This document shows positions 1,839-47,700 of a stretch of 64,000 bases of DNA, piece by piece (position 1 is the stretch's first letter; every line of letters begins with the position of its first letter). The notes beneath the pieces were generated by a model that was given only the letters and a program-made list of their open reading frames with translations, searched no databases and was not told where the DNA came from. The stretch comes from Hemiscyllium ocellatum (taxonomy: Eukaryota), in NCBI RefSeq assembly GCF_020745735.1, contig NC_083444.1:4898001-4962000 (forward strand), read 5' to 3'. Made by a program: the position numbers and the translations under genes.

Positions 1839-2010
1839 AATTAGAAAGTGGAATATGTGGCTGTTTATGCAGTACAGCTCCAAATGATTGCGAGTGTGAG
1901 GAGAATTAATATGTTAAGTAAAACATGCAAAAAAAAAGACACTCAGAAAGAAGGATATGTGAAAATCCCTATTCATATTCTGTAAGAAAAACAGTTGCAA
2001 ATGCTCTTAC

Positions 2011-18103
<16,093 letters not shown>

Positions 18104-22040: not shown

Positions 22041-22046
22041 TTTATT
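22041..22046 (-). terminator. Putative polyadenylation signal (AATAAA) of TMEM95
   Basis: tttatt on + strand, 277 nt past the inferred stop codon. Confidence 0.5.
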
Positions 22047-22322: not shown

Positions 22323-22365
22323 CTACTCAAACTGATGGTCTGCCTCAGCTCTGAACTTCCTTGAT
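22323..22365 (-). CDS. TMEM95: TMEM95 exon 7 (cytoplasmic tail and stop)
   Basis: ctttcccaacag|A TCA AGG AAG ... GAG TAG = (E)SRKFRAEADHQFE*; correct phase 2; AATAAA about 280 nt downstream. Confidence 0.72.
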
Positions 22366-25300
22366 CTGTTGGGAAAGATTTCACAAAATTTTGGACATTT
22401 ATTGTGGAAAGGAAGAGAAACGCACTGGAGGCTTAAAACTGCGAAAGAAAAACGTGAAATTATGGAAACTGCCAGTGAGGCAGCAACTGTGGGGAGAGAG
22501 AGAGAAAAACAGTGAACATTTTAGGTTGATGAACTTTCATCGGAAAAACTTGTTTTCCCATAGTGCCTTGCATGATCTTAAAAACCCAACAGACCCTTCC
22601 AGCTAATGAAGCATCTTTTGTCAATGGTAATCCTGTTGCAAATGTGTTGCTGGTCAAAGCACAGCAGGTTAGGCAGCATCTCAGGAATAGAATCCTGTTG
22701 TAAAGCTAGAGGCACATGTGCACTGAATGGTATAATGGTAATGTTAATGTTACTTTACCAGTGATCCAGAGGCCCAACCCAATGTTCTGGAGACATGGAT
22801 TTGCATCCCACCACCTTGAATCATGAAAATTTAATTCTAGAGAAAGCTGGAGCTGCAAGATGGCGTCACATCCAATTGTGAATGGTGGTGGACAATTAAC
22901 AGTTAACAGGACGAGGAGGAAAGGTTGTTGTAATTGATCCCATCCCAAATCCATTCCCTTCACCAGCAACGACAGAGGAGCCTAGCACATAAAATCAAAA
23001 GACAACACTGATGCATTTATAATCCATCTTGGCCCCATGTGATGGTCCCAAGCATCGCAGACACCAGTCTTCAATCAGTTTGGTTGAATCTGATGCTGAG
23101 AAACAGCTGATGTGTGGATATTGCAAAGGCTATGGACCCTGACACATTCCAGCTATGGTATTGAAAACTTGTCCTTCAGAACTATCTGCACACCTAGCCA
23201 AGCCAATCCAGTCCAACAACAACATAGGCATCACGTATTGTTGCTCAGGTGAAAAGCAGGGGCAAATCCAGCCCAGCCAACAGTGCTATCAAGCAGCACT
23301 TTGAAAGGAAATAGCGTGCTCACTGATGCTCAGTTTGACTCCCACCAGAACCATGATTTCACCTGACTTCATTATCGCCCTGGGTCAGTAAGCTGAATTC
23401 CAAAAGTAACATGTACAGGCCTGCCACTGAAATCAAGGCAGTATTCACTCTATCCATGCCCCTCATGATTTTATAGACTTCTAAATGGTCACCTCACAGC
23501 CTTGGAGACTCCAGGGAAAATAGCAGTCTATTTAGCAGTCTCCCTACAGCTCAACATTTTGGGCATAAGCCCTTCTTCAGGAATGATTCCTGAAGAAGGG
23601 CTTATGCCTGAAACGTCGAATTTCCTGCTCCTTGGATGCTGCCTGACCTGCTGCACTTTTCCAGCAACACATTTTCAGCTCTGATCTCCAGCATCTGCAG
23701 TCCTCAATTTCTCCTCCCTATAGCTCAAACCATTCTACCCTGGAAACACCCTTGTAAATTTTTTCTGCACCCTTTTAATTTTCACATCTTTCCTACAGCA
23801 GGGAGACCAGAACTGAATGCAGTATTCCAAAAGTGGCCTAACCAATGTCTTGCCGGGGAAGAGTGAGGCCACTGCTTTTTTGGGGGGGGGGGGGGGGGGG
23901 GGGAACACTTTAAGAATGAGATAAGTGTCCTGAAAGCTGTTATTTTTATTACATTCCAACTAGGATCAGGTAGCTCAGCAGAAAGTGGAGACTGAGCCTA
24001 GAACTGTCCCACTTGTTTGGCCAGTTTGAGTCACCATCAGGCAGGCTGCTCGACAGAGAATTTATTTTAATATTACCAACTTCTTCCCTTGCTCATTTGT
24101 GTCAGGTTTAAACTGAACAATGGTTACAAATGCTGTAACCTTTCCAGTCTGGAAATACATGATTCAGAAATTGCAGCTATCGGGAAATACATCTTGCCGG
24201 CTGCAAAGACTCATGGCAGCATTTTAGGACAGTAGTTCGGGTGTAGAAACAGTTAAGATGCTTGGATAAGTAAAACTATTTTTATTACTGTTTTGTGCTT
24301 CCAATAAGTGTCTTATATCTGCAGCGTTTACTGGTACATGTACTTGTGGTTAGGCATTCTGATTTCACTCTATAACCGAGAAAACTCCAAAATGTGGAAA
24401 TAGCTCAATCCCAAGCATTCTGGACTAGAGAGGTTACAGCGTATAGTAGAGAGAAAGACATGTTACAAAGGCTGTTAATCACATTTACTGGGAAGCTTGA
24501 TAAACACTTCGAGGAGAAATGAATAGAAGGTTCTGTTAGAGGGAATTGAAGAGTGGGGTGGGTGACAGGATGCTTGTTTGAAGCATAAACATTAACACAG
24601 ACTATATGGATTAGAATGGTCTGTTTTGTTGCTTTAAGTTACAGGCAATTTGGTCGTAATCTCTCATTAACTTACTCGAAAATTAGCGTTATGCAACCAA
24701 TCAATATCGAGCTGCTTGATAGGCCAACTATCAGATAAATGGATTCTTTCAGATCTAGCCTGTCTGTTGGAAGATCAAGGTGAATCGTTAGAATCTTACA
24801 ATATAGACGAAGGCTATTCAGACCATCATGCAAGTGAAAGCTCTTTGAGAGAGCTATGCTATTCATCCCTCTGTTCCCATGTCACACCCTCCCCACAGCC
24901 ATGACAAAAGGGACTTGTTACTTTGGTCAGTTTTATCCAGGTGATGAACACTGAACTGTCCAGCTGAGCGAGATATGACACCCACCCTATAGAGTGTTGG
25001 GCAGCTGTAGCCCAAATTATTATCCGACTTGCTGCCCTAAAACCCCATCCTATCCCACTGCTGTCCTTCCATTCTCCCAATCTACAACGGCAACACAAGA
25101 TCAGATCATGAGCTTGGTGGTTTCTCAGGGGTTAGTGGTGGTGGTGTTCTATTTTATTCACGGGATGACGGTTTTGCTGGTTAGGCCAGCATTTATTGCA
25201 TATCCCTAATTGCCCAGAGGGCAGTTCAAGAGTTAAGCACATTGCTATGGGTGTGGAGTCACATATAGGCCAGACCACATAATGATGTCAGTTTCCTTCC

Positions 25301-26429
25301 CTTAAGGACATTAGTGAACCAGACGGGTTCATGGATTTGTGGATTCATGGTCATCATTAGATTCTTAATTCCAGATCTTCTATTGAATTCAAATTCCACC
25401 ATTTACCGTGGCGGGATTTGAACCCAGGTGCCCAGGCATTATCTGGGTCCCTGGATTAACAGTCACTGATTAATTGTCACTGTATTTGTTACAAATACAG
25501 GAGGGATTTGAGAGGGAAGTAGGGAGGTCGAGGTAAGAATACCTGTTGGGAGTTGGACATTGGGCTGGAAGGTGAGTTTCGGTTTCTTTGTGGCTCAGTG
25601 GATAACCTTCTAGCCCTTGAGCGTCTACTGTGTCAGGTTTCATGATCCCTTTACGATCCGTGCTCAGAATGGAGTCCCCTTCAACTTCACTACCTATCCA
25701 TCCAAGAAATGTCTTCTCAAGCCTCCCAATCTGCATCTGCTCTCAATTATTCCACAGGCCTCCCTCCTCCAATAAAGCTACGTTCACACAGGCCTCCCCT
25801 CACTCCCAGAAGGCCCTGACCCTGTCCATTCATTGGGTGGGCCCCTGTGAAAGTTGACTGAAATGAAGTTGCCCCATATCCTTCCGACTGTCCCTGAAAA
25901 CTCAGACCCTCAGTGTTTGGAGACATTGTGGCCCTGCGTCTCGTTCAACATTGAGGGTGGTGTGATGGTGGTGAGAGGCTTTACTCACTAGGCCAGCAGG
26001 TCTTCAGACTCCAGCAGTTGACCTCCACCTCCAGGCATGTGGTGCAGTTTATAACAGTCGTGGAGTCCCCTGGACAGACAAGGAGAGCAGGACCAGCTCA
26101 GCAACAACCAGAAGCCATACCGGGATATTCCAACGATGAGTTGCTAGGCACCTTTCCCACCGCCCCCCACCCCCCCACCCGCCCTGATGGTCCAAGTGAC
26201 AGGAAAGTGCAGAGCAGGTCAGGAGACATCTGTGAAGGGGAAATAACTGTTGGATTAGTTGGGGGGGGCGGGGAGCATTTCAAACCCCAGTAGCATATGT
26301 TATCTTCTGTTGGGGCTTGAGTTCAATTTCCATCTGATGTCATGGGATTCCAGACTGGCTAAAATTGCCACTCATTCACCTTCCTCTTTCTCCTACCACC
26401 CTGCAACTCTTGGTAAACTCTTTCCCCTC

Positions 26430-26466
<37 letters not shown>

Positions 26467-29400
26467 CTGAGGTTCCATGATAAAATGCTTCCCACTGAGG
26501 TTCCAGTTCTGCTTAGATGTATTCTGAGGCTGAGTGAAGCAACATGAAGAAAATGTGCTGCAACTTTTTTTAGGCTTCTTTTATTATAACTCAGCTTTTC
26601 TTCCCCACATCAGTGTCCAAGAGATTAGCCCTTAATTCCTGGAGACCACAGAACTATATAAGCAGTGCTAGAAAGTTGGCCAACCTGATTACTCTAACAT
26701 TTCACATATTTACACCGTTCACCTTTCTGTTTAAATTGGAAGGTGAGGCATTTTGACATGTGTTAGCTTTCACCAGGGTGGCACAGTGGTTAGCACTGCT
26801 GCCTCACAGCACCAGGGTCCCAGGTTCAATTCCATCCTTGGGCAACTGTCTGCATGGAGTTTGCACATTCTCCCTGTGACTGTGTAGGTTTCCTCCAGGT
26901 GCTCTGGTTTCCCTCCAAAGATGTGCAGGCTATGTGGACTGGCCAAGGGAAATGCGGGGTTACAGGGATAGGGTAGGGGGTGTCGGTCTGGAATGGGATG
27001 CTCTTTGGATGGTTGGTGTGGACTTGATAGGCCAAATAGATGCTTCCACACTGCTGGGATTCAATGGTTTCCATCTATAGAAGCCAAAGGGTCGAAGTCT
27101 CTCTCTGTCTGTCCTGAAGTCACATGACACCAGATTATTGTCCAACAGGTGAAACAGCAGTGCTCCGAAAGCTTGTGATTTCAAATAAACCTTTTGGACT
27201 ATAAGCTGGTGTTGTGTGACTTCTGAATTTGTCCAACCCCATACCTTCATATTATCTCTCTCTCTGTCTAAGATGCTCTGAACAGGTTCGGGATTAAGCC
27301 AAGGAGACTTCCTGATCTGTGAGACTCAAGACATGATTACACACACTGAATTTCCAATGGAGTGCATTTTGGTGATGTTTCCATAGTGGGGCTTTGAATT
27401 CCAGGCTGTCCATCCCAGATCTGATAGCTTGCTGTACCCTAACCATAATTTTAAGGAGGCTGTAGGCTATACTCACTGCATTTGGGGGCACACATGGCTG
27501 CAGAGAAAAAAAGAAGAGTTTAATCAATTACCAAGAAGTAGCACTTCTATCACATCTTTAATACATTGAAATGCCCCAAGGCAATAGCATTGTTATCAGA
27601 ACAAAACTCACATGGGCAAATATTGGGTCACGAGACTAAAATCCTGGGCACATAAGTAGGCTTTAAGAAGCACTTTAAAGGAGGAAGAGGCAAAGATGTT
27701 GAAGAAGAAACCTTCAGTGTTAGTGCACTACAGGCACGGCTACCAATGGAAGAGTAAAGATAAAGTGATACATGAGAGGGTGTAGGGAGACACAGATGTC
27801 ACAGCACAGGGAGGAGCGAAGCCATGGAGAGATATGGACGAGTTATTGGACTGAGTTAGCAAGTACAGGCATAATGAGTGAACAGCAAGTTCAGGATACA
27901 GGTAACAGAGCTTTGGATTCACCAATGGCTTTCTGACCTGGCCTGACTGACAGCAAGTCTGACGCTGCCACAAAACCATACAGGAAACAAGTAGAAAATG
28001 TCTGACCTAATTTTTCATCTGAAGAAACAATGAGATTCTCCTGTGGTTTGCTCAAGAGTTTTCATAGATTTGCAATGATAGAGTGTCTTTCTCAATCTTG
28101 GGATGTCCCAGAATGCTTTGCAGCAAACTCCTATAAATACCAATGGGATAAGATGATGAGATAATCTATTTTTGGTGGTGCTGGCTAAGAGATAAATATT
28201 TTTCAGGATGCCAGCGATAACATGTCTGCTCTTTAAGAGTATCTCTTTACATCCACCTGAGAGAGCACAGGAGGGGCCTTTGTTAAACTTTTCCACTTAA
28301 AAATGACACTTCCAACAGTGTGGCACACTCTCTCTGTACTACAGTAGGAGTATAATGCTAGGCTTTGTGATCAGGTTTCTACAATATGAATTGAACCAAC
28401 ACTTTTCTGACACAGAGACGACCCACAGTTACGCCACGATCAATTCTATTAATATCCAGTAGTGGGAGAGTTATTATCTAGAGCACTGTCTCTGAGGCAG
28501 AAGGTGAGAGGAATTAGCATAACACCAAACAGCCCCATTATGGAGCAACAGCTCTCATTGTTGGATGAACATCTAGTGTTGACAGTTGTCTCTGATGAAT
28601 GTGGGTGTCCACCATCCACTTTTGCCAACTGAGTGTTGCTCATGTTTGATGTTTGAGTAAGGATCTGTCTTCAGGATGGCAACAATTATTTAAAAGTATC
28701 AACAACAAATGTCTTCTCACCCTCTTGGGTCAATTTTGGAAGCTTTACTTCATAGAGCCAGTTCCAAAAGATAGGCAAGTCTGTTAGGGTCTGGTTGATC
28801 TCTGTGGAGACAAATGCACATGCAGAGATTGTGATGGTCATTTTCAAGACTAGCATCTATAGTATAGTATACAGGTAGAAGAATAATCCTGCCTACCTAT
28901 CACTCGTAGAACACGGTGGACCTTTTCTGAGATCGTATCAACCAACACTTCATCTGGGCAGAAAAATAGCAGTATCATATTTTTACCATTATTGAATAAA
29001 ATTGATCTCTTATATATTAGAGTTGATCTTTCTCTGCACCGTCTTTATAGCTGTAACACTATATTCTGCACTGTGCTCTATTACCCGGATGTAGTTATGT
29101 GTTTGTCTGGTTAGCAGCAATATGATATTTTTCACCGCATCTCAGTACATGGACAGTAGCAAGTCAAATCAAAATTCCCTCCCACAGAATCTCAGTGAAC
29201 CCCCGTCTTATTCATTTCCACTGGACAGAATTCTACTGCACTCAAACTACTTGCGGGCGGCACGGTGGCACAGTGGTTAGCACTGCTGCCTCACAGCATC
29301 AGAGACCTGGGTTCAATTCCTGCCTCAGGCGAATGACTGTGTGGAGTTTGCACATTCTCCCCGTGTCTCATGGGTTTCCTCCGGGTGCTCCGGTTTCCTC

Positions 29401-30380
29401 CCACAGTCCAAAAATGTGCAGGTTAGGTGAATTGGCCATGCTAAATTGCCCTTAGTGTTAGGTGCAGGGGTCAATGTAGGGGAATGGTCTGGGTGGGTGC
29501 GCTTCAGTGGGTCGGTGTGGACTTGTTGGGCCGAAGGGCCTATTTCCACACTGTAAGTAATCTATCTACTTCCTTTCCATTACCATTACAGAGAACTCAA
29601 ACATAATCTTTCCCTCCCATTTTATAGGAAGACTTAGGAACCAAATGCCTTCCTGTGCCTTCTCATTGCTCATGGACAGGTTTCTCTGATTGAGGAGAGA
29701 CATCAACAAATGAATGGTCTGTTCCTGTACTGTAAATACTTGCTAATTAATGTTTCCACAGCTGGAAATCTGATAATACTTAGAGGTAACAATAATGATC
29801 TTGATTTAAAGTACCTCTATTTGTCTGATTTAGCCAATTGCAAACAGTCTTTCCTAAAAATAAGGCAGTGGTGATTCTAACAAATAAAAATAAATGTATA
29901 AGAAATAGGGCAGGGATGACAGAAGCAAGACAGCGAATGTTTTAGTTGCAAGGAGGAACCAGTGTTAAAGTCTCAGGCCTGATAGGGTGGTGGATACAGA
30001 CCAAATAGTAGTTTTCAAAGGAGAAGAAGAAACACAGGACGGAAGAGAAAAAAATAGTTGAAGGGATATGTGGAAAGGACACAAAAGTGGAACTAACTGG
30101 ACTGGCATTCAAAACTGCTGCCAAATAGCTGTCGGTGTGCTGCATCACACAATGATTCTATTCTGTAATAGGTCACCTCACCAAATAGAAATTTATTCAG
30201 GTCTGCATCTGTGTACTTTGTGCAGTTTGTAGTCTCTGTCAGTGCCTTGTACTCCCCACACAGCTTCTCGAATCTGTCTCTTACTCTTTTGTGTGGAAAA
30301 GCACAGAACATACAGGCTTCAGCCTTCAATGAGACTCCCAGCCAGAAGCTGGCCACCATCACAGCGCTGGCTGTCTTCAT
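22323..30380 (-). CDS. TMEM95: Sperm-egg fusion protein TMEM95 (IZUMO1/SPACA6/TMEM95 superfamily), complete 7-exon gene, 189 aa
   Basis: join(complement): 30182-30380, 28897-28953, 28721-28801, 27477-27497, 25989-26069, 24676-24763, 22323-22365 = 570 nt open frame, all GT-AG. Signal peptide, CMFC, DEVLVDTISEKVHRVLRVIEI, LPIFWNWLYEVKLP, CAPKC, NCTTC..CW....CWP, single TM. Matches recalled human TMEM95 motifs (CVFC, DEVSMNKVTEKTHRVLRVMEI, LPSYWSWLRKTKLP, CPPAC, NCSTC..CW...CFP). Confidence 0.93.
23586..23621 (+). ncRNA. Minimal type I hammerhead ribozyme in a PLE-derived insertion (about 23555-23713)
   Basis: AUUC-CUGAAGA-A-GGGC(UUAU)GCCU-GAAA-CGUC-GAAU; the insertion is flanked by CTCCCTA(C/T)AGCTCAA. 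Confidence 0.65.
24676..24763 (-). CDS. TMEM95: TMEM95 exon 6 (transmembrane helix)
   Basis: cag|NRLDLKESIYLIVGLSSSSILIGCITLIFE|gtaagt. Confidence 0.88.
25989..26069 (-). CDS. TMEM95: TMEM95 exon 5
   Basis: cag|RDSTTVINCTTCLEVEVNCWSLKTCWP|gtgagt. Confidence 0.93.
26432..26464. repeat. (TC)n microsatellite
   Basis: Direct reading. Confidence 0.95.
26777..27075 (+). mobile_element. HE1-type SINE
   Basis: A box GGTGGCACAGTGGTTAGCA, B box GGTTCAATTCC, V-domain, tail. Confidence 0.88.
27477..27497 (-). CDS. TMEM95: TMEM95 exon 4 (21-nt microexon)
   Basis: ttttctctgcag|CC ATG TGT GCC CCC AAA TGC A|gtgagt = AMCAPKC (human ALCPPAC). Confidence 0.88.
28721..28801 (-). CDS. TMEM95: TMEM95 exon 3
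   Basis: cag|EINQTLTDLPIFWNWLYEVKLPKLTQE|gtgag. Confidence 0.93.
28897..28953 (-). CDS. TMEM95: TMEM95 exon 2
   Basis: cag|DEVLVDTISEKVHRVLRVI|gtagg. Confidence 0.93.
29255..29566 (+). mobile_element. HE1-type SINE, full length, in TMEM95 intron 1
   Basis: GGGCGGCACGGTGGCACAGTGGTTAGCACTG..GGTTCAATTCC.. tail TTTCCACACTGTAAGTAATCTA. Confidence 0.92.
30182..30380 (-). CDS. TMEM95: TMEM95 exon 1 (signal peptide, CxxC)
   Basis: MKTASAVMVASFWLGVSLKAEACMFCAFPHKRVRDRFEKLCGEYKALTETTNCTKYTDADLNKFLF, donor G|gtgag; the start could alternatively be the second Met. Confidence 0.9.
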
Positions 30381-30982: not shown

Positions 30983-31687
30983 TGTTTTGGTTAGCAGGAT
31001 GGCTGATATACAATGCAGAATTCGTCAACAGCATGGGTTCAATTCCTGTACATGAAGGACTCACCTTCTCAACATCTGTCCTCACCTGAGGTGTGGTGAC
31101 CCTCTCTTTAATGAGAAAGCAGACCTTTGGTCTGGTTGGACTGAAGTGACTTTATCTTTTAAACTGTACATTACAAATAGTAGCAGGCATTTGAGATACA
31201 AATGACTGGAGTTGTCGTATCTTAGCAATACAAAACAAATCAAACTGCCTTCCCTCCTCTGTATGTACTATGCCTTGTGAGAAAGGGTTTCTCTGATTTT
31301 TATTTCTGGTTAGATATTGGAATTTGGTTGACAAATTTTTAAAAAGACAAGGGTTATTGTATCTTTCCCTACCTCAGGATACCCCAAAGGCAGCCAACAT
31401 CATCAATGATCCTCCCAACCTGGTAATACTCTCTTCCAACCTCTCTTCCGTTAAACAGAAGATACAGAAGCTGAAACGCACAGGTTCAAAAATGGCTTTT
31501 TCCCTGCTGTTATTGATGAAAGGACTGCTCCAATTTCAAATCTAACTCTCGTGCTTTTGATCTTGCTTTCGTGTACCTCCTGTGCACCCATGACCTTGCC
31601 TGCCTCACTCTGTCCAAACAATTTATGTTCTATATGACCTTGTTTGCTGTGATCTGCCTGTGCTGCACGCAAAACAAAACTTTTCAC

Positions 31688-31780
31688 TGTCCTGATGAAG
31701 GGCTTTTGCCCGAAACGTCGATTTCGCTGCTCCTTGGATGCTGCCTGAACTGCTGTGCTCTTCCAGCACCACTGATCCAG
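31688..31780 (+). mobile_element. Short PLE-derived insertion with hammerhead core, between TMEM95 and RADX-like
   Basis: CTGATGA-A-GGGC(TTTT)GCCC-GAAA-CGTC at 31692-31719, followed by the family tail. Confidence 0.75.
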
Positions 31781-31999
31781 AATCCAATGGTACATGTGGC
31801 AACAGTAAACCATAGGAAATGATTTCATGCTCATCATTGGTCCCTGTATTAATTATAATTGCCTGCCCTTTGAACTGTCAAGAGTCTAGAGTGCTTTTAT
31901 TTAACAAATCAACCTGTTTTGTTATGGGTCACCTGGTCCACAGGTAAGGACACACCTACAGCACCAGAAGGGGCCTCAGAAGCAGAGAAAGTGCTGCCA

Positions 32000-32720
32000 C
32001 CTTTCGGGAAACGACCGCCAAACCCGCCCCGTGACGCCATCACGTCGGCCCCTCCCCCCTCTCATTGTGTCGCGGGGCGGCGCGCTGACGTCACGGCGCC
32101 GCCGGCCGTTTCCTTCAGCCTGCACCAAGATGGAAGTGGGCGAGCGGAGCAAGTGCGCCTTCAGGGCGATGTTCCCGGCCTTCGGGGCCGGCCGCGGGCC
32201 CGTCCGCTCGTCGCTGGTGTGCCAGCAGCCGGTGGTCGTGCTGTCGGTGGAGAGGTACCCGCGGGATCCGGGGAGCGGGGACGGCCTGTGGGAGGCGCCG
32301 GGCGAGGGCGACCTGTACGACCTGAGCCTGTCGGAGGGCCACTGCCGCCTCCGGGTGGTGCTGCGGCCGTCCCTCAACTGGACGGTCCGCCGCAACCTGC
32401 TGAGCAGCGGCTGCGAGCTGAGCAACGTCCGCCTCGCTCTGGAGTACGACGAGCGGCGCCTGGGAGTTGGCTTACTGGTCTTCGTGCTGCTGGAGGCCCA
32501 GGTCGTCGCCAGGGGAGACTGCAAGGCGCCACCTGCCGCCCGGAGGCTGAGACTGCAGAAGCTGCACGTGTTCAACGAGGGCACTGAGCTGCCCATTGGC
32601 CCAGAGCTGCCCATTAAAGCCAAGAGGCGCTACTACCTTTCTCTGTGGGATGCTGCCAACTACTACGGGGAGGCTTGGCACCGACACCCGCCTGGGCAGC
32701 CCGCTCAGCGACTTGAAGGT
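32000..32720. promoter_or_regulatory. CpG island / promoter of the RADX-like gene, possibly shared with TMEM95
   Basis: Sharp GC/CpG-rich block in otherwise CpG-poor DNA; palindromic CRE TGACGTCA at 32086-32093, CRE-like TGACGCCA at 32032, GC boxes at 32023-32030 and 32074-32080. Confidence 0.8.
32130..32718 (+). CDS. RADX: RADX-like exon 1 (OB1)
   Basis: MEVGERSK..VVVLSVERY..LYDLSLSEGHCRLRVVLRPSLN..YDERRLG..YYLSLWDAANYYGEAW; donor G|gtgaac. Confidence 0.9.
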
Positions 32721-35700
32721 GAACTGGGCAGTGTTCAGACCCAAAGAACGGTCACAGCAGATGTCAACTGCTGAAAGAACTGCGGTTGCTGTAAACAAAA
32801 AAAAAAGGAGCAATTGCGGGGAAAGCTCAGTAGGTCTGGCAGCATCTGCGCAGAAGAGAAATCAAGAGTTCCCGTTTCAGGTTGAGTGACCCTGCCTCGT
32901 GGCTGCGGGCAGACTCAAAACATTAACCCTCTTTCTCTCCCTTTGCCGATCCTGTCAGAAATCACAGGACATTAGTCCCCAACAGGTTTCTTTGAGGTCA
33001 CGAGCTTTCAGAGCACTGCTCCTTCGCCAGGGTGAAATGTCAGATCAGGAGTGTGGTGGCTCAGTGGTTAGCACTGCTGCCTCACAAAGCCAGGAACACA
33101 GGTTCGATTCCAGCCTCAGGGCGACTGTGGAGTTTGTACATTCCACAATCTGGGTGGATTGGCCATGTTAAATTGCCCACAAATGCCCGAAACATCGAAT
33201 TTCCTATTCCTTGGATGCTGCCTGACCTGCTGTGCTTTAACCAGCAACACATTTTCAACTGTGATCTCCAGCATCTGCAGACCTCATTTTCTACACAAAT
33301 GGGATTACATAGGATTACAGTGTCTGGGTGGTGGGATGCAGTTTGGAGTGTTGGTGTGGACTCAATGGGCTGAATGGCTGCCTTCCATACTGTAAGGATT
33401 CTATCGTTCCATGTTTATATCTCTACAGAGAACAGTGCATCTCGCAGCACTTCCGCAGTTGGTGGTCTTTTTCCTTGAACCATAGCCCACACCCCACATC
33501 AAGATCCCAGTCCAACTCTGAAACAAAACCGAAAACTGCAGGTGCTGGAAATCTGAAACAGAAATTGCTGGAGAAATTGACCCAGACCAGAAGCATTTGT
33601 GGAGAGAAAGCAGAGTTAACGTTTCAATTCCAGATGGGTGGCATGGTGGCTCAGTGGTTAGCACTGCTGCCTCACAGCACCAGGGACCCAAGTTCAATTC
33701 CATCCTCTGGCAACTGTTTTTGTGTGGAGTTTGCACATTCTCCCGAGTGTCTGCGTGGGTTTCCTCCCACAGTCTAGAGATGTGCAGGCTAGGTGAATTG
33801 GCTATGCTAAATTATCCATCGTGTTCAGGGATGTGTATGTTCGGTGCCTTAGAGGGAAATGAGTCTGGGTGAGGGTCGGTATGGACTTGTTGAGCTGAAT
33901 GGCCTGTTTCGATTCTATGATCTGCTGAGTTTCTCCAGCAGTTTCTAGTTTTGTCCAGACCCACCCGGGATTTTTCAAATCTGCAGCCAAATCAAATCAC
34001 TAATGTTTTTCCTTCAACCGCTTGCCCCTGCCAAATTCATCCATCCCAACCTCTTCCCCTCCATCCCCTTACCCTCACCGCGATGCTTTGCTAGGCTACC
34101 ATTCTAAACCGAACAAGCTCCCAGTCGACAGCAACGTAATGATGACCATTCAGGGTGAATGTTGGGTAGCCAAATATTGGGTAGGCTGCTAGGAAAACTC
34201 TCCTGTTTTCAGGACCAAACCACGCCTCAAACCACGTGGCCTCAGTATTCTTTACTTCAAACCCAAGAGCTGAAAATGTGTTGCTGGTCAAAGCACAGCA
34301 GGTTAGGTAGCATCCAAGGAACAGGAAATTCGACGTTTCGGGCCAGAGCCCTTCATTTGCAATGATTGTTGAGGAGCTGCACAAGTTAGGGGATGGCGAG
34401 CATTAAAAGGTGTTTATCTGTCATTGCTGCTACTCACCTTGAGCAATAATTCTTTTATTTTTAAGAGTATCTTAAAGGCATTGAGTAGAATTGTTGCTGA
34501 GTAATGGTTGTTTACTTTGATCAACTTCAAAGTATGAATTCAAATCCATTATAGAAAGGTGTACAATTCATAGATTGACCTCAGAAATTTAAATGAGGTA
34601 TTAAAAACTCAACTGATTCATTAATGTTCTACGTGAAAGAGCTGGCATCGCCCTTACTTATGACATAATTTCATTTGATAGCTAACTGTGTCATCTGAAG
34701 TAACTTAGTAAAGCACTCAGTAGTCAAAACAATTGCTGGCATGTCCATCACCTACACAGGACAAGGGATGGCCATTAAAACTGATCACATCCCAGTCACA
34801 TGTGTTGATATCAGTAGCTGGTTGGTGCTATATAGGGTAATTTGATTTTTTTAAATTGATGGGAAGTGGGTGTTATTGGTAAAGCAAGCATTTATTCTTG
34901 TCCAGTGCTCTTCTGAGAGGTGGTGAGCTGCTGCCTTGAGTCACTGCAGTGTGTTTAGAATATGTAGATTACATATTTCCAAGTGAGTGGCTTGTTAATG
35001 GTGTTGTTTCCATATATCTTCTGCCCTTGTCTTGTAATGGTTGTGGGTTTTGAAATTGTTATCAAAGGATCATTGTGGAATTCCTGCAGTGTACCTTGTA
35101 GATGATCTACAATTCTGCAACTGAGCGGCGGCGGTGGTGGAGGGAGTGGATGTTTGTGAATATGATGCCAGTCAAATTAATTACTTTGTTTTGGATGATG
35201 TCGAATGTCGTGAGTGTTGGAGCTACACACATCCAGTGCTGTTTTGCTTCAAAGGGAAAGGGAAGAGTCAGGCTTGCTTGCAGGTTTTATGGAGAGCTGA
35301 GATCCCAACTGGTGTCTTTTCTCTCAGTTCTGTGACAGACTGCTACTTAAAACCAATCCAAACACCATTGCTGGACATTTTCAATTTTTTCAATTCATAC
35401 GTACCTGATGCTAGTTTGTGTCTCAAAAATATCAAATCCAGCTTCATTAAAAAAACGTCTTCACATAACTAATAAGTGATTGCTTGTTCTATGTTTGTTT
35501 TAAATTATTTTTAAAAACTGGTAATCCAGACGTTCATATTCCAGTTTTTAGATTTCAAACCAAGAAATATTTAGTCCTTATAGTGAAGAGATTAGTGAAG
35601 TTGTAATTTTTCACCTTAGAGTAACGAAGGTTAGGGGAAAAGAATTTAATAGAAGTATTTAAAATCATGATGGCTTTAAAAGAGTAGAAACTGTTTTCAC

Positions 35701-38700: not shown

Positions 38701-41700
38701 TTGATTGTAAGGGAGTGAAGGAAAGAACTGAAGATGGTCATCAATCTATGCTGTGAAGAAACCATCAGCTACAAGACGGGGAAAGACCAAGACTGTTTTG
38801 ATGAGAATGACCCCATTATTCATCCGGAAGAAGTGGAAAGCTATCCGGGCCTGGCAAATCAATGTCATCAGCGGGGCAATGAGGAGAACTCAACAAAGGC
38901 AGTCCTACAAAGAAGAACTAGGGAAATAAAGAACCACTGGCAGACTGGAAAAGTTAAAGAGCTGCAATTCCTTGCCAAGAAGCACAACATGGGAGACTTC
39001 TTCAGTGCCACAAAGGAAATTATTATATCCAGCAGCATTGGCACCAAATCAGTACTAAATCAGGATAGAACTAAGAGGCAGAGGAAAATATCAGCCTCTG
39101 GTAGAAACATTTAATGGAACTCTTAAATCACGATGCAATAGTAGGTGAGGAAGTGTGGATGAACTCCCCAACTCCCCATCGAAGGTTATCTTAGACTCCC
39201 ACCTAGTGTGGCAGAAATCAAAGCCACCATTAAACATGAAGAATGGGAAAGCTGTTGGAGTGGACGGGATACCAGTGGACATTTTAAAACTTGGAGCAGA
39301 GCTTACCTGTCATCCCCATCCAATGTTCCTGAAAATTTGGGACAAAGAAGAAATGAAAATGTGTTGCTGGAAAAGCGCAGCAGGTCAGGTAGCATCCAAG
39401 GAACAGGAGATTCGACGTTTCGGGCATAAGCCCTTCTTCAGGAAGGGCTTTTTTCTTGACAAAGAAGAAATCCCTGCCGACCTCAGGCACGCTGCCAATG
39501 CCGCTGTCTTCAAGCAAGGAGACAAAGTGGACTGTAGGAATTACCAGGAATCTCTCCAGTCTCCATCAGGAAGATCAATGCCTGAATCCCTTCTGAGGAA
39601 ATCCTTTCTGAAAGCCAATGCGACTTCTGACCAAGCTATGCAAGTATGGACATGATTTCACTGCTCAGCAACTCGAAGAGAAATTCCATGAGCAATCCAA
39701 CTCGCTGGCGTTCATTGATCTGACCAAGACTCCTGATTCAGTTAATCAGGGAGTGCTATAAAGACCTAGTCAAAGGTCGGCTCTCCAGAGAAATTCGTAT
39801 CATCATTCATGTCATCCATAGTAAGATGTGGTGACAGTCCTCACTGACAAAATGTAATAATCCTTCTGAGGTCAAGACAGGAGTCAAGCAGGGATGTGGC
39901 ATTTCCGCACCCTTTTCTCCAGCTTCATCACTACTCTTTTTTTTATCTTGTCAAGAACAAGCTTCTGATGTGGACATTGTCGTCACGATGGACAGAAACG
40001 TTTTCACCCTCAATGGATTGAAATCTAAGGGGGTAACTCTGACCTTGTTTGTAAAACTTCAGTATGCGGATGACAATGTCTCCGAAGACCATCTTTAAGC
40101 CTGGCTCAACACCTTTTGTGGAAACATACCGAAGAATTGGTCTCCGCGTCAACCTGAAGAAGACTCAAAATCTTTTATCAACCTATCTCAGTCAAGTTCA
40201 ATAGACAAAACCTCTGAAATGTGGATTGTTTCCCCTTCCTGGGAAGTTACCTCTCGTCTAAGGCAGGCATTAATGTGGAGATTCAACATCACATCCAATC
40301 TGTGAGCGCTGCCTTCAGACGCCTAAGGATGAGAGTCTTTGACAATCGTGACTTCAGTGCTGATAGCAGGATTCTTGTGTATAAGGCAGTCAGCTTTTTG
40401 ACTCTCCTACATAACTCCAAAACTTGGACTAAGTATATACATAACCTCAAGGACCTGGAGACCACATCAGCTGAGAGTTTAGGTATACTAATGTCAGTGT
40501 CCTTGGAGCAGCCAGTAGCACTACCGACAAGACCATATTCATTGAAACTAACACCACTGGGCCAGCCACAAGCTTAGGATGCCTGAGTTCCAACTGCCAA
40601 AGCAAATCTTCTTTGCCTAGCTCAGGGAAGATACTTAAATGAGAAGAGAACAAAGAAAGCACTTAAGAGACTTGCAAAAAGTTTCCCTCAAGAAGTGCAA
40701 CATAGGTATCAATGCATGAAGGACACTCTTTCAGGAGAAGCTGACTTGGAGGAAGCGTGTGTTTGAATGGAGACAATTCTTTGAGAACACACAACGGCAA
40801 GAGGAAATATGGAAAAGGAGCCAGGCATAGGAATGTCAGCGATCTCAAGGCCAACGAACAATTATACCTCGTGGAAGCACCTCTCAGATATGTGGTCGGG
40901 CTCATCAGCCACACAAGGACTCTCAGAACCCATGACCTGTGACACGCAACTTCGTAGGTGTCCATTCCTGTTAGTGAGGGATTGCCAATGGCACCAATTG
41001 AGGGTAATGTGTATGAGATGCTATGTGGGAATAGATGGACATAGAGACCATGAAGGGCCGTGGGGATGCGTGTTTAGAATAACTTGGCATGAGGAGCCAT
41101 TGGTGTGGAGCATGAGGGGGTGTATACCCTGACATGGGTAGGCATGAGAAGAATCTTTTGCACTTGTATTTCAAAAGATTCTCCCATTACCAATTCTGGT
41201 TGTAACGTCTTTGAATCGTGACTTTGAAAAAGTTATCCAACTCCATTAAGATTGTGGAGGACCAGGACTTGCCTACCTGTACACTGGAGCTAGCCATATT
41301 GGGAGTGGAAGGTGCATGCTTACCACCTGAAACAATCCCCACTCTTGAAAGGCTGTGGTGAAAATTCATAACTGGGGAATAGAGGATGGGATTCTGAGAA
41401 TCTGGTTTTGGTCGTCTCTCCCTGACTTAATGAAAATCTTAGCCTTTATATCCACCTAAGAGAGCAGACAGGTTTTGTACGAAAGCTGCTGTTTTTCTGA
41501 ACTTGAAGCAGTCCCTTAGTACTGTAGTGACGGCCTATATTCTGTCATGTGTATCAGGGGTAAGTTTCTCATTAATCATGGTGCCATGGCTCAAACGTAT
41601 TGCTTCTCCAAGCTCCCCAGACGTGTTAGCCAAGTAGTAATTTGTACAATAAACCTTATACAAAATTATAAAATCAAGGCCTTAGATGGAGACAAGAGAG

Positions 41701-44700: not shown

Positions 44701-47700
44701 TTTTGCATGGCTGCTGAGCCCAATTCTAGAGCCACATCTCCAACCACACATTTGGCAGCTATTTCCAGGAGGTGGCATTGATCCTTGGCATTGAGGGTGT
44801 TTGCATTTCTTTCTCTGCTTCCTTTTCTGTGCTTCCTCTTGCTGACTGTCATTCTCGAAGAATTCTATTCCTTCATACAAGAATTCCCTCTGAGTTGGTT
44901 TCTTCTGAACGGGGATCTCCCATGCGTTGATATCTGTGTTGCATTTCATAATGGAAGCATTCAGGGAGTCTGAGACACTCTTCCTTTGTTCTCTTACTTG
45001 AGTATCTTCCTGGAGCTGTATGAAGATGATTTGCATTGGCAGTTGGAGCTCGGGCATCCTAAGTCAAAAGGTGTGGCACTGGAAAAGCACAGCTGAAAAT
45101 GTGTTGCTGGTTAAAGCGCAGCAGGTCAGGCAGCATCCAAGGAACAGGAAATTCGACGTTTCGGGCATAAGCCCTTCATCAGGATTTCCTGATGAAGGGC
45201 TTATGCCCGAAACGTCTAATTTCCTGTTCCTTGGATGCTGCCTGACCTGCTGCGCTTTAACTAGCAACACATTTTCAGCTCTGATCTCCAGCATCTGCAG
45301 ACCTCACTTTTTACTGGAAAAGTACAGCCGGTCAGGCAGCAGGAGAGTCGGTGTATCGGGCATTAGCCCTTCCTCAGGAATATTGGGGGGGGGGACACGG
45401 GGCTGAGAGATAAATGGGAGGGGGTTGGGACTGCAGGGAAAGTAGCTTGGAAGGCGATAGGTAGATAGGTCAGAGCAGAGGGTAGAGCGGATAGGTGGGA
45501 AGGAAGATGGACAAGTAGGATTGTTCGAGAGGGCAGGGTCAAAGAGGAGGGTTGGATCTGGAGTGGGATGGGGGAGATGAAGAAACTGGCGAAATCGGCA
45601 TTGATGCCATGTGGTTGCAGGGTCCCAAGGCAGACGATGAGGCGTCCCTCCTCCAGGCATTGGATGGGTTGGATTTGGCGATGGAGGAGGGCCAGGACTT
45701 GCATGTCCATGGGGGAGTGGGAGGTGGAGTTGAAGTAGCTGGCCATAGGGCGATGGGGTTGTTGGGTGTGTTGCCCTATGCTTGTCCTCCCGGCTGATGT
45801 GGGAAATCCATCTCAAACAGCCTTAATGCTACCTCTCAGGGGCCTTGAGGCAGCATCTATACATAATCTCAAGTTTTGGAGCAATATAGAAGAGTCAGAA
45901 GAATAATTGTAGTCAGTTCTGATATCACACGATAGTTCCTTTTTCATTCAAACTCTGGTTATAAGACAATTGTGCAATAGCCACGTCATTTAAGCTAATG
46001 GGACTGAAATTGCTTTCTAGACAATACAGGTAAAGAAAGTTCACATTTTGCAAATAATGGTATAAACTCTTCAATTGTGTTAAAGCCAATTTGAGTTATT
46101 AGCAGAATCAGCTGTACTTTTGCATTGCAAGATCTTGGTACCAGCATGAAAGTTAAAGACCATCATCCTTAGGCATCTAAAAGCAACACTCACAGATTGG
46201 ACGCAATGTCAGATCTCCGCATTAATGCCATTCATAGATGAGATTTAGCTTCCTTGGTAGAGGAAATGTTCGATGTTTCGATTTTTGTTGATCTTAATGG
46301 AGGAATGGACTGAAATTTGACTTGGGACAGGTTTGTAAAAGGTTTGAGTCTTCTTGAGGTTGAGGCTGAGATTAATTCTTCGGTATGCTTCCACAAAGGC
46401 ATTAAGTAAGGTTTGAAGATTCAATTCCGAGAGTGCGGAGATGATCTCCTCCGATTACCGAAGTCAAGTGAGCTCTGTGTTGTTGTCTTCGTGAATTTTG
46501 ACTGGTTGAGGTGGAAACATTTTCTCTCTATTCTGTAGATGGTGTTGGTGATGAAGATGGAGCAAAGGGAGGGGTTGATGACACATCTTTGCTTGACCAC
46601 TATCTTGCCCTCAAAGGATTCTGTTATATTACCATTGATGAGGACCGTCACCAATATCTAGCCATAGAGGAGACAGAGGATGTTAATTAATTTCTTTGAG
46701 TAGCTGGTCTTTGACAGGGTCTTTCAAAGCACTTCTGGATTGACTGAGTCAAATACGGAACATTGTTACAGTATGAGTAGATTTGATTTGACGTATTATT
46801 GTCACATGTACTGAGATACAGTGAAAAGTATTGTTTTGTGTGCTAACCAGATACATCATACCTTACATAAGTGTACATTAGAGTAATAGAACATAATGTA
46901 GAATATAACGTTATAGCTACAGAGAAAAATCAACTCTAATATATGAGAGGTCAATTCATAAGTCTGATAACAGCAGGGAAGAATGAGTTCCTAAATCTGT
47001 TGGTGCATGTATTCAAACTTTTGTATTTTCTGTCCAATGGAAGATGGTGCAGAGAATAGAACTGGGGTAGAAAGGGTTTTTGATTATGTTGACTGCTTTC
47101 CTGAGGCAGCAGAAGTGTAGACAGAGTCATAGAAGGAAGGCTGGTTCGTGTGATGGACTGGGCTGTTTTCACAACTCTTTGTACTTTCTTGCAGTCTTGG
47201 TTAGAGGGTTGTGATGTATCCAGACAGGATGCTTTGTATGGTAAGAGTAAGAGTCATTGTGGATATACCAAATTTTTTTAGCCCTCTGAGAAAATAGAGC
47301 CATTGGTGTGCTTTCTTGACTGTTGCATTGATGTGCATGGACATAGAATGCTGATTGGTGGAGGTGTTACAATGGAGAATGCAACAAAGTAGATAAATCA
47401 CCTGGGCCAGTTGAAATATTTCCCACGCTGTTGCAAGAGGCTGGGGTCAAAATAGCAGGAGCATTGGCAAGAATTTTCAATTCCTCTCGGGCCACAGGAG
47501 AGATGCCAGAAGCAAGAACAAATGTTTCTGGAAAAGCTCAGCAGGTCTGGCAGAGTCTGTGAACAGAAATCAGAGTTAATGTTTTGGGTCTAGTGACCCT
47601 TCAAAGTTTGTGAGAAGATTTGTAGCTCGGGTGCTAGTTGCTGTGGTTCTGTTCGCCAAGCTGGGAGTTTGTGTTGCAAACGTTTCGTCCCCCTGTCTAG

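What the first reader, a model, noticed from the sequence alone, without database searches (positions are those of the whole stretch)
22323..30380. Intact TMEM95 sperm-egg fusion gene in a cartilaginous fish
Seen: seven GT-AG exons join into an uninterrupted 189-aa type I membrane protein, with the full Cys scaffold (CxxC, C, C, CxxxC, CxxC, C, C), EKxHRVLRV, WxWL and NCxTC motifs. The ORF track shows only fragments of it. Known: TMEM95 is an IZUMO1/SPACA6-fold factor required for mammalian sperm-egg fusion and is studied almost only in mammals. From memory, the HRxxR arginines (human R70/R73) were implicated in egg binding, and they are conserved here. Inference: TMEM95 and its putative receptor-binding surface go back at least to the jawed-vertebrate ancestor. 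Sharks (internal fertilisers) may use a TMEM95-based gamete-recognition module that I am not aware of being characterised.
Basis: partly seen in the sequence, partly recalled or inferred. Interest (0 to 1): 0.85.

Follow-up and report, generated by a model that had tools for sequence, protein, structure and literature searches.

The report
Intact shark TMEM95 gene, already annotated
The window carries a complete, conserved shark copy of TMEM95, a sperm protein needed for sperm-egg fusion in mammals. The gene call is right, but public databases already list this gene in about sixteen sharks and rays, so the real gain is a corrected full-length gene model.

Summary
This includes a 21-nt microexon that supplies the CxxxC.

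It is TMEM95, not IZUMO or SPACA6:
- Separate exons hit Pfam PF15203 in colinear order.
- The spliced protein scores 194 bits against a profile built only from bony-vertebrate TMEM95.
- The catshark orthologue (77% identical) matches human TMEM95 structure 7UX0 at E=7e-34, with no IZUMO/SPACA6 hit.
- The gene sits in a 100/99-supported chondrichthyan clade.
- Bowfin gene order (KCTD11–RADX–TMEM95) links the shark locus (RADX–TMEM95) to the alligator locus (KCTD11–TMEM95).

R70 and R73, and seven of the eight residues of the conserved surface, are identical to human.

Novelty is low. NCBI already names TMEM95(-like) genes in about 16 chondrichthyan species, plus bowfin, coelacanth, amphibians and reptiles. 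One such model, Hemiscyllium ocellatum isoform X1, is encoded exactly by this window. A 2026 preprint reports that the conserved arginine surface binds the sperm protein FIMP. A role in shark fertilisation remains inferred.

The parts
30182..30380 (-). Exon 1 (199 nt). It holds the ATG, the signal peptide, the first CxxC (CMFC), C41, C53 and helix 1-2.
   Evidence: Searches give the ATG and the GTGAGG donor. Pfam PF15203 matches profile positions 1-34. It is 74% identical to exon 1 of S. canicula TMEM95-like X2. There are 3 nt differences from C. punctatum.
28897..28953 (-). Exon 2 (57 nt), encoding DEVLVDTISEKVHRVLRVI. It carries K77, R80 and R83, which correspond to human K67, R70 and R73.
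   Evidence: One search gives the AG/GT borders. This is exactly the segment missing from S. canicula X3 and Narcine X4.
28721..28801 (-). Exon 3 (81 nt), encoding helix 4 with FWNWL.
   Evidence: Pfam PF15203 matches profile positions 61-86, E=1.9e-4.
27477..27497 (-). Exon 4, a 21-nt microexon encoding (A)MCAPKC, which supplies the CxxxC.
   Evidence: It is the only phase-compatible AG..GT interval with CxxxC between E3 and E5. It has a strong polypyrimidine tract and a GTGAGT donor. It is identical in C. punctatum. It is present in the S. canicula X2, Hypanus, Amblyraja and Rhinoraja models and skipped in several others.
25989..26069 (-). Exon 5 (81 nt), encoding the beta-hairpin with NCTTC, C138 and C144.
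   Evidence: Pfam PF15203 matches profile positions 96-120 at 28.2 bits, above the 27-bit cut-off. It matches 7UX0 at E=8.6e-5 on its own.
24676..24763 (-). Exon 6 (88 nt), encoding the juxtamembrane stretch and the single transmembrane helix.
   Evidence: One search gives the acceptor and the GTAAGT donor. The hydropathy maximum lies at residues 155-175. It is colinear with the TM segment of shark and ray models.
22323..22365 (-). Exon 7 (43 nt including the stop), encoding the short cytoplasmic tail SRKFRAEADHQFE.
   Evidence: The same tail ends C. plagiosum models P0013 and P0018. Narcine has SRKFQAK.... The annotated C. punctatum gene ends at the orthologous stop.
22041..22046 (-). AATAAA, a candidate polyadenylation signal about 280 nt after the stop.
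   Evidence: Pattern scan only. Its use was not shown.
31956..32040 (-). Alternative upstream 5' exon used by the public H. ocellatum isoform X1. It splices to exon 2 and skips exon 1, so the product has no signal peptide. It lies in the GC-rich island shared with RADX.
   Evidence: The N-terminus of P0021 is encoded exactly here. GC content is 0.56 at 32001-34000.

Best explanation
The locus is the functional shark orthologue of TMEM95.

The 189-aa product has these parts, in order:
- a cleavable signal peptide
- an ectodomain of about 125 residues, made of a four-helix bundle and a beta-hairpin
- ten ectodomain cysteines, including two CxxC motifs, that tie the bundle and hairpin together
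- no Ig domain
- one transmembrane helix
- a 13-residue cytoplasmic tail

By homology with mammals (inferred, not shown), it is made in spermatids, sits in the acrosomal membrane and is needed for sperm-egg membrane fusion. It would act through the conserved basic surface of helices 3 and 4. In the window protein this surface is K77, R80, V81, R83, V84, I87, F97 and W100. In human TMEM95 the same surface binds the sperm protein FIMP and is required for egg binding.

The canonical transcript presumably starts just upstream of exon 1. Transcripts that start in the RADX-shared CpG island skip exon 1 and are probably non-productive.
For: **Gene structure and intactness:**

**Family assignment:**
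- Per-exon Pfam PF15203 hits fall in colinear order.
- The spliced protein scores 194 bits (E=9e-56 at Z=1e6) against a profile of 14 bony-vertebrate TMEM95 sequences.
- It is 76.7% identical over its full length to S. canicula TMEM95-like X2.
- That S. canicula protein matches 7UX0 at E=7e-34 with all ten Cys aligned.
- An AlphaFold2 model of the S. canicula protein (pLDDT 77) has 7UX0 as its only significant Foldseek hit: E=1.8e-9, TM 0.78. IZUMO1 comes next at E about 0.13.

**Small single-copy family:** an exhaustive hmmsearch of 1.84 billion representatives found 49 hits. Every one that was named is TMEM95, apart from one turtle entry labelled IZUMO3 and one unnamed hit that appears spurious.

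**Phylogeny:** the chondrichthyan clade has 100/99 support, and the remaining groups are consistent with the species tree.

**Synteny:**
- RADX lies head-to-head with TMEM95 here and in Mustelus, S. torazame and C. punctatum.
- Bowfin has KCTD11–RADX–TMEM95, and alligator has KCTD11–TMEM95.

**Constraint:**
- Exons differ from C. punctatum by 2.46% and introns by 4.62% (Fisher p=0.015).
- dN/dS is 0.42.
- Identity to skates is 65%, with the HRVLRV block invariant.

**Functional surface in human:**
Against: - No expression data are available. Testis specificity, use of exon 1 and the six junctions are not shown for this species.
- All six orectolobiform models retrieved (NCBI isoforms and one GenBank entry) start elsewhere and lack exon 1.
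- dN/dS against C. punctatum rests on only 14 substitutions and is not on its own significantly below 1.
- The structure model used a 77%-identical proxy, not the window protein.
- TMEM95 has not been tested functionally in any non-mammal. The representatives found include no bird or teleost, so it is evidently dispensable in some lineages.
Confidence: 0.9

Rival explanations
1. It is a lineage-specific paralogue ('TMEM95-like') or another member of the IZUMO/SPACA6/TMEM95 superfamily, not the orthologue of mammalian TMEM95.
For: NCBI labels most chondrichthyan models 'TMEM95-like'. The immediate neighbours here, RADX and a muscle nAChR subunit gene, are not the neighbours I recall for human TMEM95. 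That recollection is my own knowledge and was not tested.
Against: - Only one family was recovered in the exhaustive search, with no second chondrichthyan group.
- The groupings in the tree are consistent with the species tree.
- Bowfin KCTD11–RADX–TMEM95 bridges the shark locus to alligator KCTD11–TMEM95.
- No IZUMO1 or SPACA6 chain is hit at E<=10 by sequence.
- There is no Ig domain: only about 9 residues separate the last Cys from the TM helix.
Confidence: 0.04
2. The canonical secreted or membrane form is not made in this lineage. The locus is transcribed only from the RADX-shared CpG island as isoforms without a signal peptide, so it is functionally decaying or repurposed.
For: All six orectolobiform models retrieved (C. 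plagiosum X3, X4 and X5, H. ocellatum X1, R. typus X2 and X4) lack exon 1. Several also skip the microexon or read through into introns.
Against: - Exon 1 keeps its ATG, reading frame and donor here and in C. punctatum, with 3 differences in 199 nt.
- Exon 1 is 74% and 67% identical in protein to catshark and electric-ray exon 1, where models include it. That is not expected for unused sequence over more than 150 My.
- All ten Cys and the TM exon are intact.
- Gene models built without testis RNA-seq would give the same picture (inference).
Confidence: 0.06

Closest known systems
Human/mouse TMEM95 (Pfam PF15203; PDB 7UX0)
   Same: - Type I topology, with a four-helix bundle and beta-hairpin and no Ig domain.
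- All ten ectodomain cysteines, including both CxxC motifs and the CxxxC.
- The N-glycan sequon in the hairpin.
- The surface residues K67, R70, V71, R73, V74, I77 and W90 are identical, and Y87 is replaced by F.
- The window protein is about 39-40% identical to bear and platypus TMEM95. The catshark proxy is 43% identical to the human 7UX0 chain in the Foldseek alignment.
   Different: - The first two helices are divergent: exon 1 alone finds nothing in PDB.
- There are two extra N-glycan sequons (N52, N88).
- The genomic neighbours differ: RADX lies head-to-head and KCTD11 is not adjacent in the window.
- No functional or expression data exist for any cartilaginous fish.
NCBI RefSeq 'sperm-egg fusion protein TMEM95-like' of sharks and rays (e.g. 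Scyliorhinus canicula X2, Hypanus sabinus, Amblyraja radiata)
   Same: Same seven coding exons, the same length (189-190 aa) and 65-77% identity. The H. ocellatum X1 model is encoded exactly by this window.
   Different: The orectolobiform models, including the one for this genome, lack exon 1 and often lack the microexon or the TM exons. The model here is full length.
[quoted passage not shown]
   Same: They share the four-helix bundle, hinge and paired CxxC architecture. Foldseek ranks IZUMO1 second (E about 0.1, TM about 0.3).
   Different: There is no Ig-like domain and no significant sequence similarity. TMEM95 does not bind JUNO in mammals (Tang et al. 2022).

Membership tests
TMEM95 (Pfam PF15203) | Significant match to the family profile over the ectodomain | tested here: met
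   - E1, E3 and E5 hit PF15203 at profile positions 1-34, 61-86 and 96-120, with 19.4, 21.5 and 28.2 bits against a cut-off of 27.
- The whole spliced protein scores 194 bits against a local profile of bony-vertebrate TMEM95.
- The spliced protein itself could not be sent to the Pfam tool because it has no reference.
TMEM95 (Pfam PF15203) | Type I membrane topology: signal peptide, single C-terminal TM helix, short tail | tested here: met
   The N-terminus is hydrophobic and ends in KAEA just before C23, which aligns with residue 1 of the 7UX0 chain. There is a single hydropathy peak at residues 155-175. No dedicated signal-peptide or TM predictor was run.
TMEM95 (Pfam PF15203) | Ten ectodomain cysteines, including two CxxC motifs that link bundle and hairpin | tested here: met
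   C23, 26, 41, 53, 115, 119, 128, 131, 138 and 144. All are aligned with the Cys of 7UX0 in the catshark orthologue.
TMEM95 (Pfam PF15203) | Four-helix bundle plus beta-hairpin fold without an Ig domain | tested here: met
   This was tested on a proxy, S. canicula P0001, which is 77% identical to the window protein. The AF2 model has helices at 34-49, 59-62, 69-89 and 92-115 and strands at 123-128 and 133-138. Its best PDB match is 7UX0 with TM 0.78 and E=1.8e-9.
TMEM95 (Pfam PF15203) | Conserved basic surface on helices 3 and 4 (human K67, R70, R73 and neighbours) | tested here: met
   K77, R80, V81, R83, V84, I87 and W100 are identical to human, and F97 replaces Y87.
TMEM95 (Pfam PF15203) | Positional orthology with tetrapod TMEM95 (KCTD11 neighbourhood) | tested here: inconclusive
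   KCTD11 is not seen in the window. The evidence is an indirect bridge: bowfin has KCTD11–RADX–TMEM95, alligator has KCTD11–TMEM95, and sharks have RADX–TMEM95.
TMEM95 (Pfam PF15203) | Testis/acrosomal expression and requirement for sperm-egg fusion | not testable with these tools
   No transcriptome or functional data were reachable.
IZUMO1 / SPACA6 | Ig-like domain between the hinge and the TM helix | tested here: not met
   Only about 9 residues lie between C144 and the TM helix. There is no sequence hit to any IZUMO1 or SPACA6 chain at E<=10.

The most novel reading that the evidence does not exclude
The pocket that binds FIMP in mammals is almost unchanged in sharks. Yet a 2026 preprint places the origin of FIMP after that of TMEM95. 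If that dating holds, shark TMEM95 must use this pocket for an older ligand. The ligand could be an undetected, fast-evolving FIMP-like aromatic-motif protein or the long-sought egg receptor. The slowly evolving shark protein could serve as bait to find it.
Probability: 0.35. Interest if true: 0.6.

Novelty: already known. Interest (0 to 1): 0.3.

Why it matters
Papers as late as 2021 stated that TMEM95 lacks clear non-mammalian homologues (PMC8488580). The shark gene is a clean counter-example. It dates the protein and its functional surface to the jawed-vertebrate ancestor or earlier.

Public annotation and two 2026 preprints already reflect this ('TMEM95 predates FIMP'; 'limited and scattered distribution'). 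The practical value here is modest and has three parts:
- a correct full-length model, with the signal-peptide exon and the 21-nt microexon, for bamboo and epaulette sharks, whose retrieved public models all lack exon 1
- a synteny bridge that supports orthology
- the observation that the FIMP-binding pocket is conserved in a lineage reported to lack FIMP

Tried and rejected
- **Exon 1 alone against PDB:** no hit at E<=1. The N-terminal helices are too divergent, so this does not count against the family assignment.
- **Exon 5 alone against PDB:** a designed Kelch repeat protein (SAKe6AR) ranks above 7UX0, but only because six 5.8-bit repeat matches are summed. I treated it as spurious.
- **Multi-species dN/dS:** not possible. 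The look-up of encoding contigs had no record for P0001 and returned no DNA for Hypanus, Mustelus, S. torazame or Rhinatrema. Only C. punctatum DNA was usable.
- **Spliced 189-aa protein in remote tools:** it has no reference, so it was not sent to the Pfam, structure, atlas or database tools. Single exons, a 77%-identical proxy and local HMMER were used instead.
- **Broad multi-term literature searches:** swamped by unrelated papers. Pairwise searches found no text that discusses TMEM95 in cartilaginous fishes or coelacanth.
- **The search of earlier findings:** returned nothing for this window.
- **Downstream nAChR gene as a link to human 17p13 (CHRNE or CHRNB1):** rejected as evidence. Its exons match Torpedo and mammalian gamma at least as well as epsilon.
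Full report
**1. What is in the sequence**

| Exon | Coordinates (minus strand) | Length |
|---|---|---|
| E1 | 30380..30182 | 199 nt |
| E2 | 28953..28897 | 57 nt |
| E3 | 28801..28721 | 81 nt |
| E4 | 27497..27477 | 21 nt |
| E5 | 26069..25989 | 81 nt |
| E6 | 24763..24676 | 88 nt |
| E7 | 22365..22323 | 43 nt, with the stop |

- Every intron begins GT and ends AG, with pyrimidine-rich acceptors.
- The joined CDS is 570 nt and encodes 189 aa without a stop.
- E4 is a microexon. It is the only interval between E3 and E5 that keeps the frame and encodes CxxxC. It has a T-rich tract and a GTGAGT donor.
- The listed motifs are all present: CMFC, C41, C53, CAPKC, CTTC, C138, C144, EKVHRVLRV, FWNWL and NCTTC.
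- There are three N-glycan sequons and one hydrophobic helix at about 155-175.
- The window contains no N.

**2. Independent support for the exon structure**

- A search with the exon-1 part of a stop-free ORF found NCBI models of Scyliorhinus canicula and Narcine bancroftii.
- The spliced window protein aligns end to end with S. canicula isoform X2 (190 aa) at 76.7% identity, with a single one-residue gap.
- The segments absent from other isoforms match my exon borders exactly. S. canicula X3 and Narcine X4 lack residues 67-85 (E2). Narcine X2 lacks 113-119 (E4).
- The window is collinear with, and mostly 89-94% identical in DNA to, a Chiloscyllium punctatum scaffold (L001).
- All seven exons are present in L001 with identical lengths, AG/GT sites and an open frame. 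There are 14 differences in 570 nt.
- Exons differ by 2.46% and introns by 4.62% (Fisher p=0.015).
- NG86 dN/dS is 0.42, from 8.5 non-synonymous and 5.5 synonymous changes. The sample is small, so this is weak on its own.
- The retention of 65% identity to skates, with an invariant EKVHRVLRVIE block, is the stronger sign of constraint.

**3. Which family**

- E1, E3 and E5 each hit Pfam PF15203 (TMEM95) and nothing else, at successive profile positions.
- A profile built only from 14 bony-vertebrate TMEM95 sequences scores the window protein at 194 bits. 200 shuffles score 7.8 bits or less.
- The catshark orthologue matches the human TMEM95 ectodomain (7UX0) at E=7e-34 over residues 24-148, with all ten cysteines aligned. 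No IZUMO1 or SPACA6 chain appears even at E<=10.
- An AlphaFold2 model of that orthologue (mean pLDDT 77) shows four helices, a two-stranded hairpin and a TM helix.
- Foldseek gives 7UX0 as its only significant match: E=1.8e-9, TM 0.78, 43% identity. IZUMO1 entries follow at E about 0.1-1.

**4. Distribution and orthology**

- A word-based search with the catshark protein returned 23 clusters, all chondrichthyan and nearly all named 'sperm-egg fusion protein TMEM95(-like)'. The genera are Scyliorhinus (2 species), Mustelus, Carcharodon, Chiloscyllium (2 species), Hemiscyllium, Rhincodon, Heterodontus, Heptranchias, Hypanus, Amblyraja, Rhinoraja, Narcine and Pristis.
- An exhaustive profile search of 1.84 billion cluster representatives found only 49 hits at E<=1e-3.
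- The 20 that I looked up are mostly named TMEM95. They come from snake, geckos, turtle, alligator, caecilian, frogs, platypus, carnivores, bowfin and coelacanth. A few carry no family name: a newt hypothetical protein, two uncharacterised squamate entries, and one turtle entry labelled IZUMO3. One is a spurious hit with no name or organism.
- No bird, teleost or jawless fish appeared among those looked up.
- In a maximum-likelihood tree the window protein falls in a chondrichthyan clade with 100/99 support. The mammal clade is also well supported, the amphibian and sauropsid groupings more weakly, and the basal branching is weak.

Gene order supports orthology:
- Here, RADX (Pfam PF17659; exon from about 32031 on the plus strand) lies head-to-head with TMEM95.
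- The same pair is annotated in Mustelus asterias, S. torazame and C. punctatum.
- Bowfin has lectin–KCTD11–RADX–TMEM95.
- Alligator has lectin–KCTD11–TMEM95.
- From my own knowledge, not tested here, KCTD11 is the neighbour of human TMEM95 at 17p13.1 and human RADX is X-linked.
- The bowfin order thus bridges the shark and amniote arrangements.

**5. Functional surface**

- Tang et al. 2022 showed that R70A, R73A and the double mutant drastically reduce binding of human TMEM95-Fc to hamster eggs.
- In the 7UX0 alignment these residues are the two arginines of HRVLRV. They are R80 and R83 in the window protein.
- A 2026 preprint (PMC13192804) reports a cryo-EM structure in which this same surface (K67, R70, V71, V74, I77, Y87, W90) forms the pocket for an aromatic motif of the sperm protein FIMP. 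The preprint states that TMEM95 predates FIMP.
- In the window protein seven of the eight surface residues (those seven plus R73) are identical, and Y87 is F.
- A second 2026 preprint describes TMEM95 as having a 'limited and scattered distribution' among vertebrates.
- An older paper said it lacks clear non-mammalian homologues.

**6. State of public annotation for this genome**

- The 110-aa H. ocellatum 'TMEM95-like isoform X1' (P0021) is encoded exactly by the window. Its first 27 residues map to 32040..31960 on the minus strand, in the GC-rich island next to RADX. It continues through E2-E5 and ends by reading into intron 5 ('SE' then stop).
- The window is therefore from Hemiscyllium ocellatum or a near-identical genome.
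- All six orectolobiform models retrieved lack E1, the signal-peptide exon. Several also lack the microexon or the TM exons.
- The likely reason is gene models built without testis transcripts (inference).

**7. Verdict**

The mechanism is inferred from mammals, and no expression or function is shown for sharks. Novelty is low because the gene is already named in this and many related genomes, and its pre-mammalian origin is noted in recent preprints. No paper text in the searchable library discusses the cartilaginous-fish gene. The points worth keeping are the corrected model, the synteny bridge and the conserved FIMP pocket.

Noticed in passing
window 32031-32774 (+) and 54365-54811 (+): The RADX gene (Pfam PF17659) starts in a GC-rich island about 1.7 kb from the TMEM95 start codon, head-to-head, and runs through at least 54.8 kb. 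The same RADX-TMEM95 pairing is annotated in Mustelus, S. torazame, C. punctatum and bowfin.
   Followed up: partly
window 1972-16559 (-): exons at 16323-16559, 15044-15232, 9219-9590, 6832-6990 and 1972-2157: Downstream of TMEM95, on the same strand, lies a muscle-type nicotinic acetylcholine receptor subunit gene. It is closest to the Torpedo gamma subunit (E=6.6e-33 and 1e-27). Mammalian gamma scores as well as or better than epsilon.
   Followed up: partly
window 31956-32040 (-) and whole window vs L001: The window encodes the H. ocellatum TMEM95-like X1 model exactly. It is collinear with, and mostly 89-94% identical in DNA to, Chiloscyllium punctatum scaffold BEZZ01001387. The source is therefore an epaulette or bamboo shark (family Hemiscylliidae).
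   Followed up: yes
public models P0006, P0010, P0012, P0013, P0017-P0019, P0021-P0023: Many NCBI chondrichthyan TMEM95 models are defective. Faults include the 21-nt microexon skipped (QE-GD-STT junction), exon 1 replaced, intron read-through, and a missing TM exon. Carcharodon's model is labelled 'uncharacterized protein'.
   Followed up: partly
L003 18756-22944 (bowfin): In bowfin a zona-pellucida-domain gene (ZP-N plus Zona_pellucida, 525 aa) lies immediately downstream of TMEM95, so a sperm gene and an egg-coat-type gene sit side by side. No equivalent is seen in the shark window.
   Followed up: no
window 12140-12517 (-), 3000-4200 (-), and 8548-8979, 23580-23717, 31451-31837, 39155-39655, 45020-45406: The window contains interspersed repeats. 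There are reverse-transcriptase fragments of LINEs. There is also a short element whose translation repeats '[20 protein letters not shown]', present in many copies on both strands, including in TMEM95 intron 6.
   Followed up: no
window 26393-26480: A (GA)n/(CT)n microsatellite, read as an ERERER run, lies in TMEM95 intron 4.
   Followed up: no
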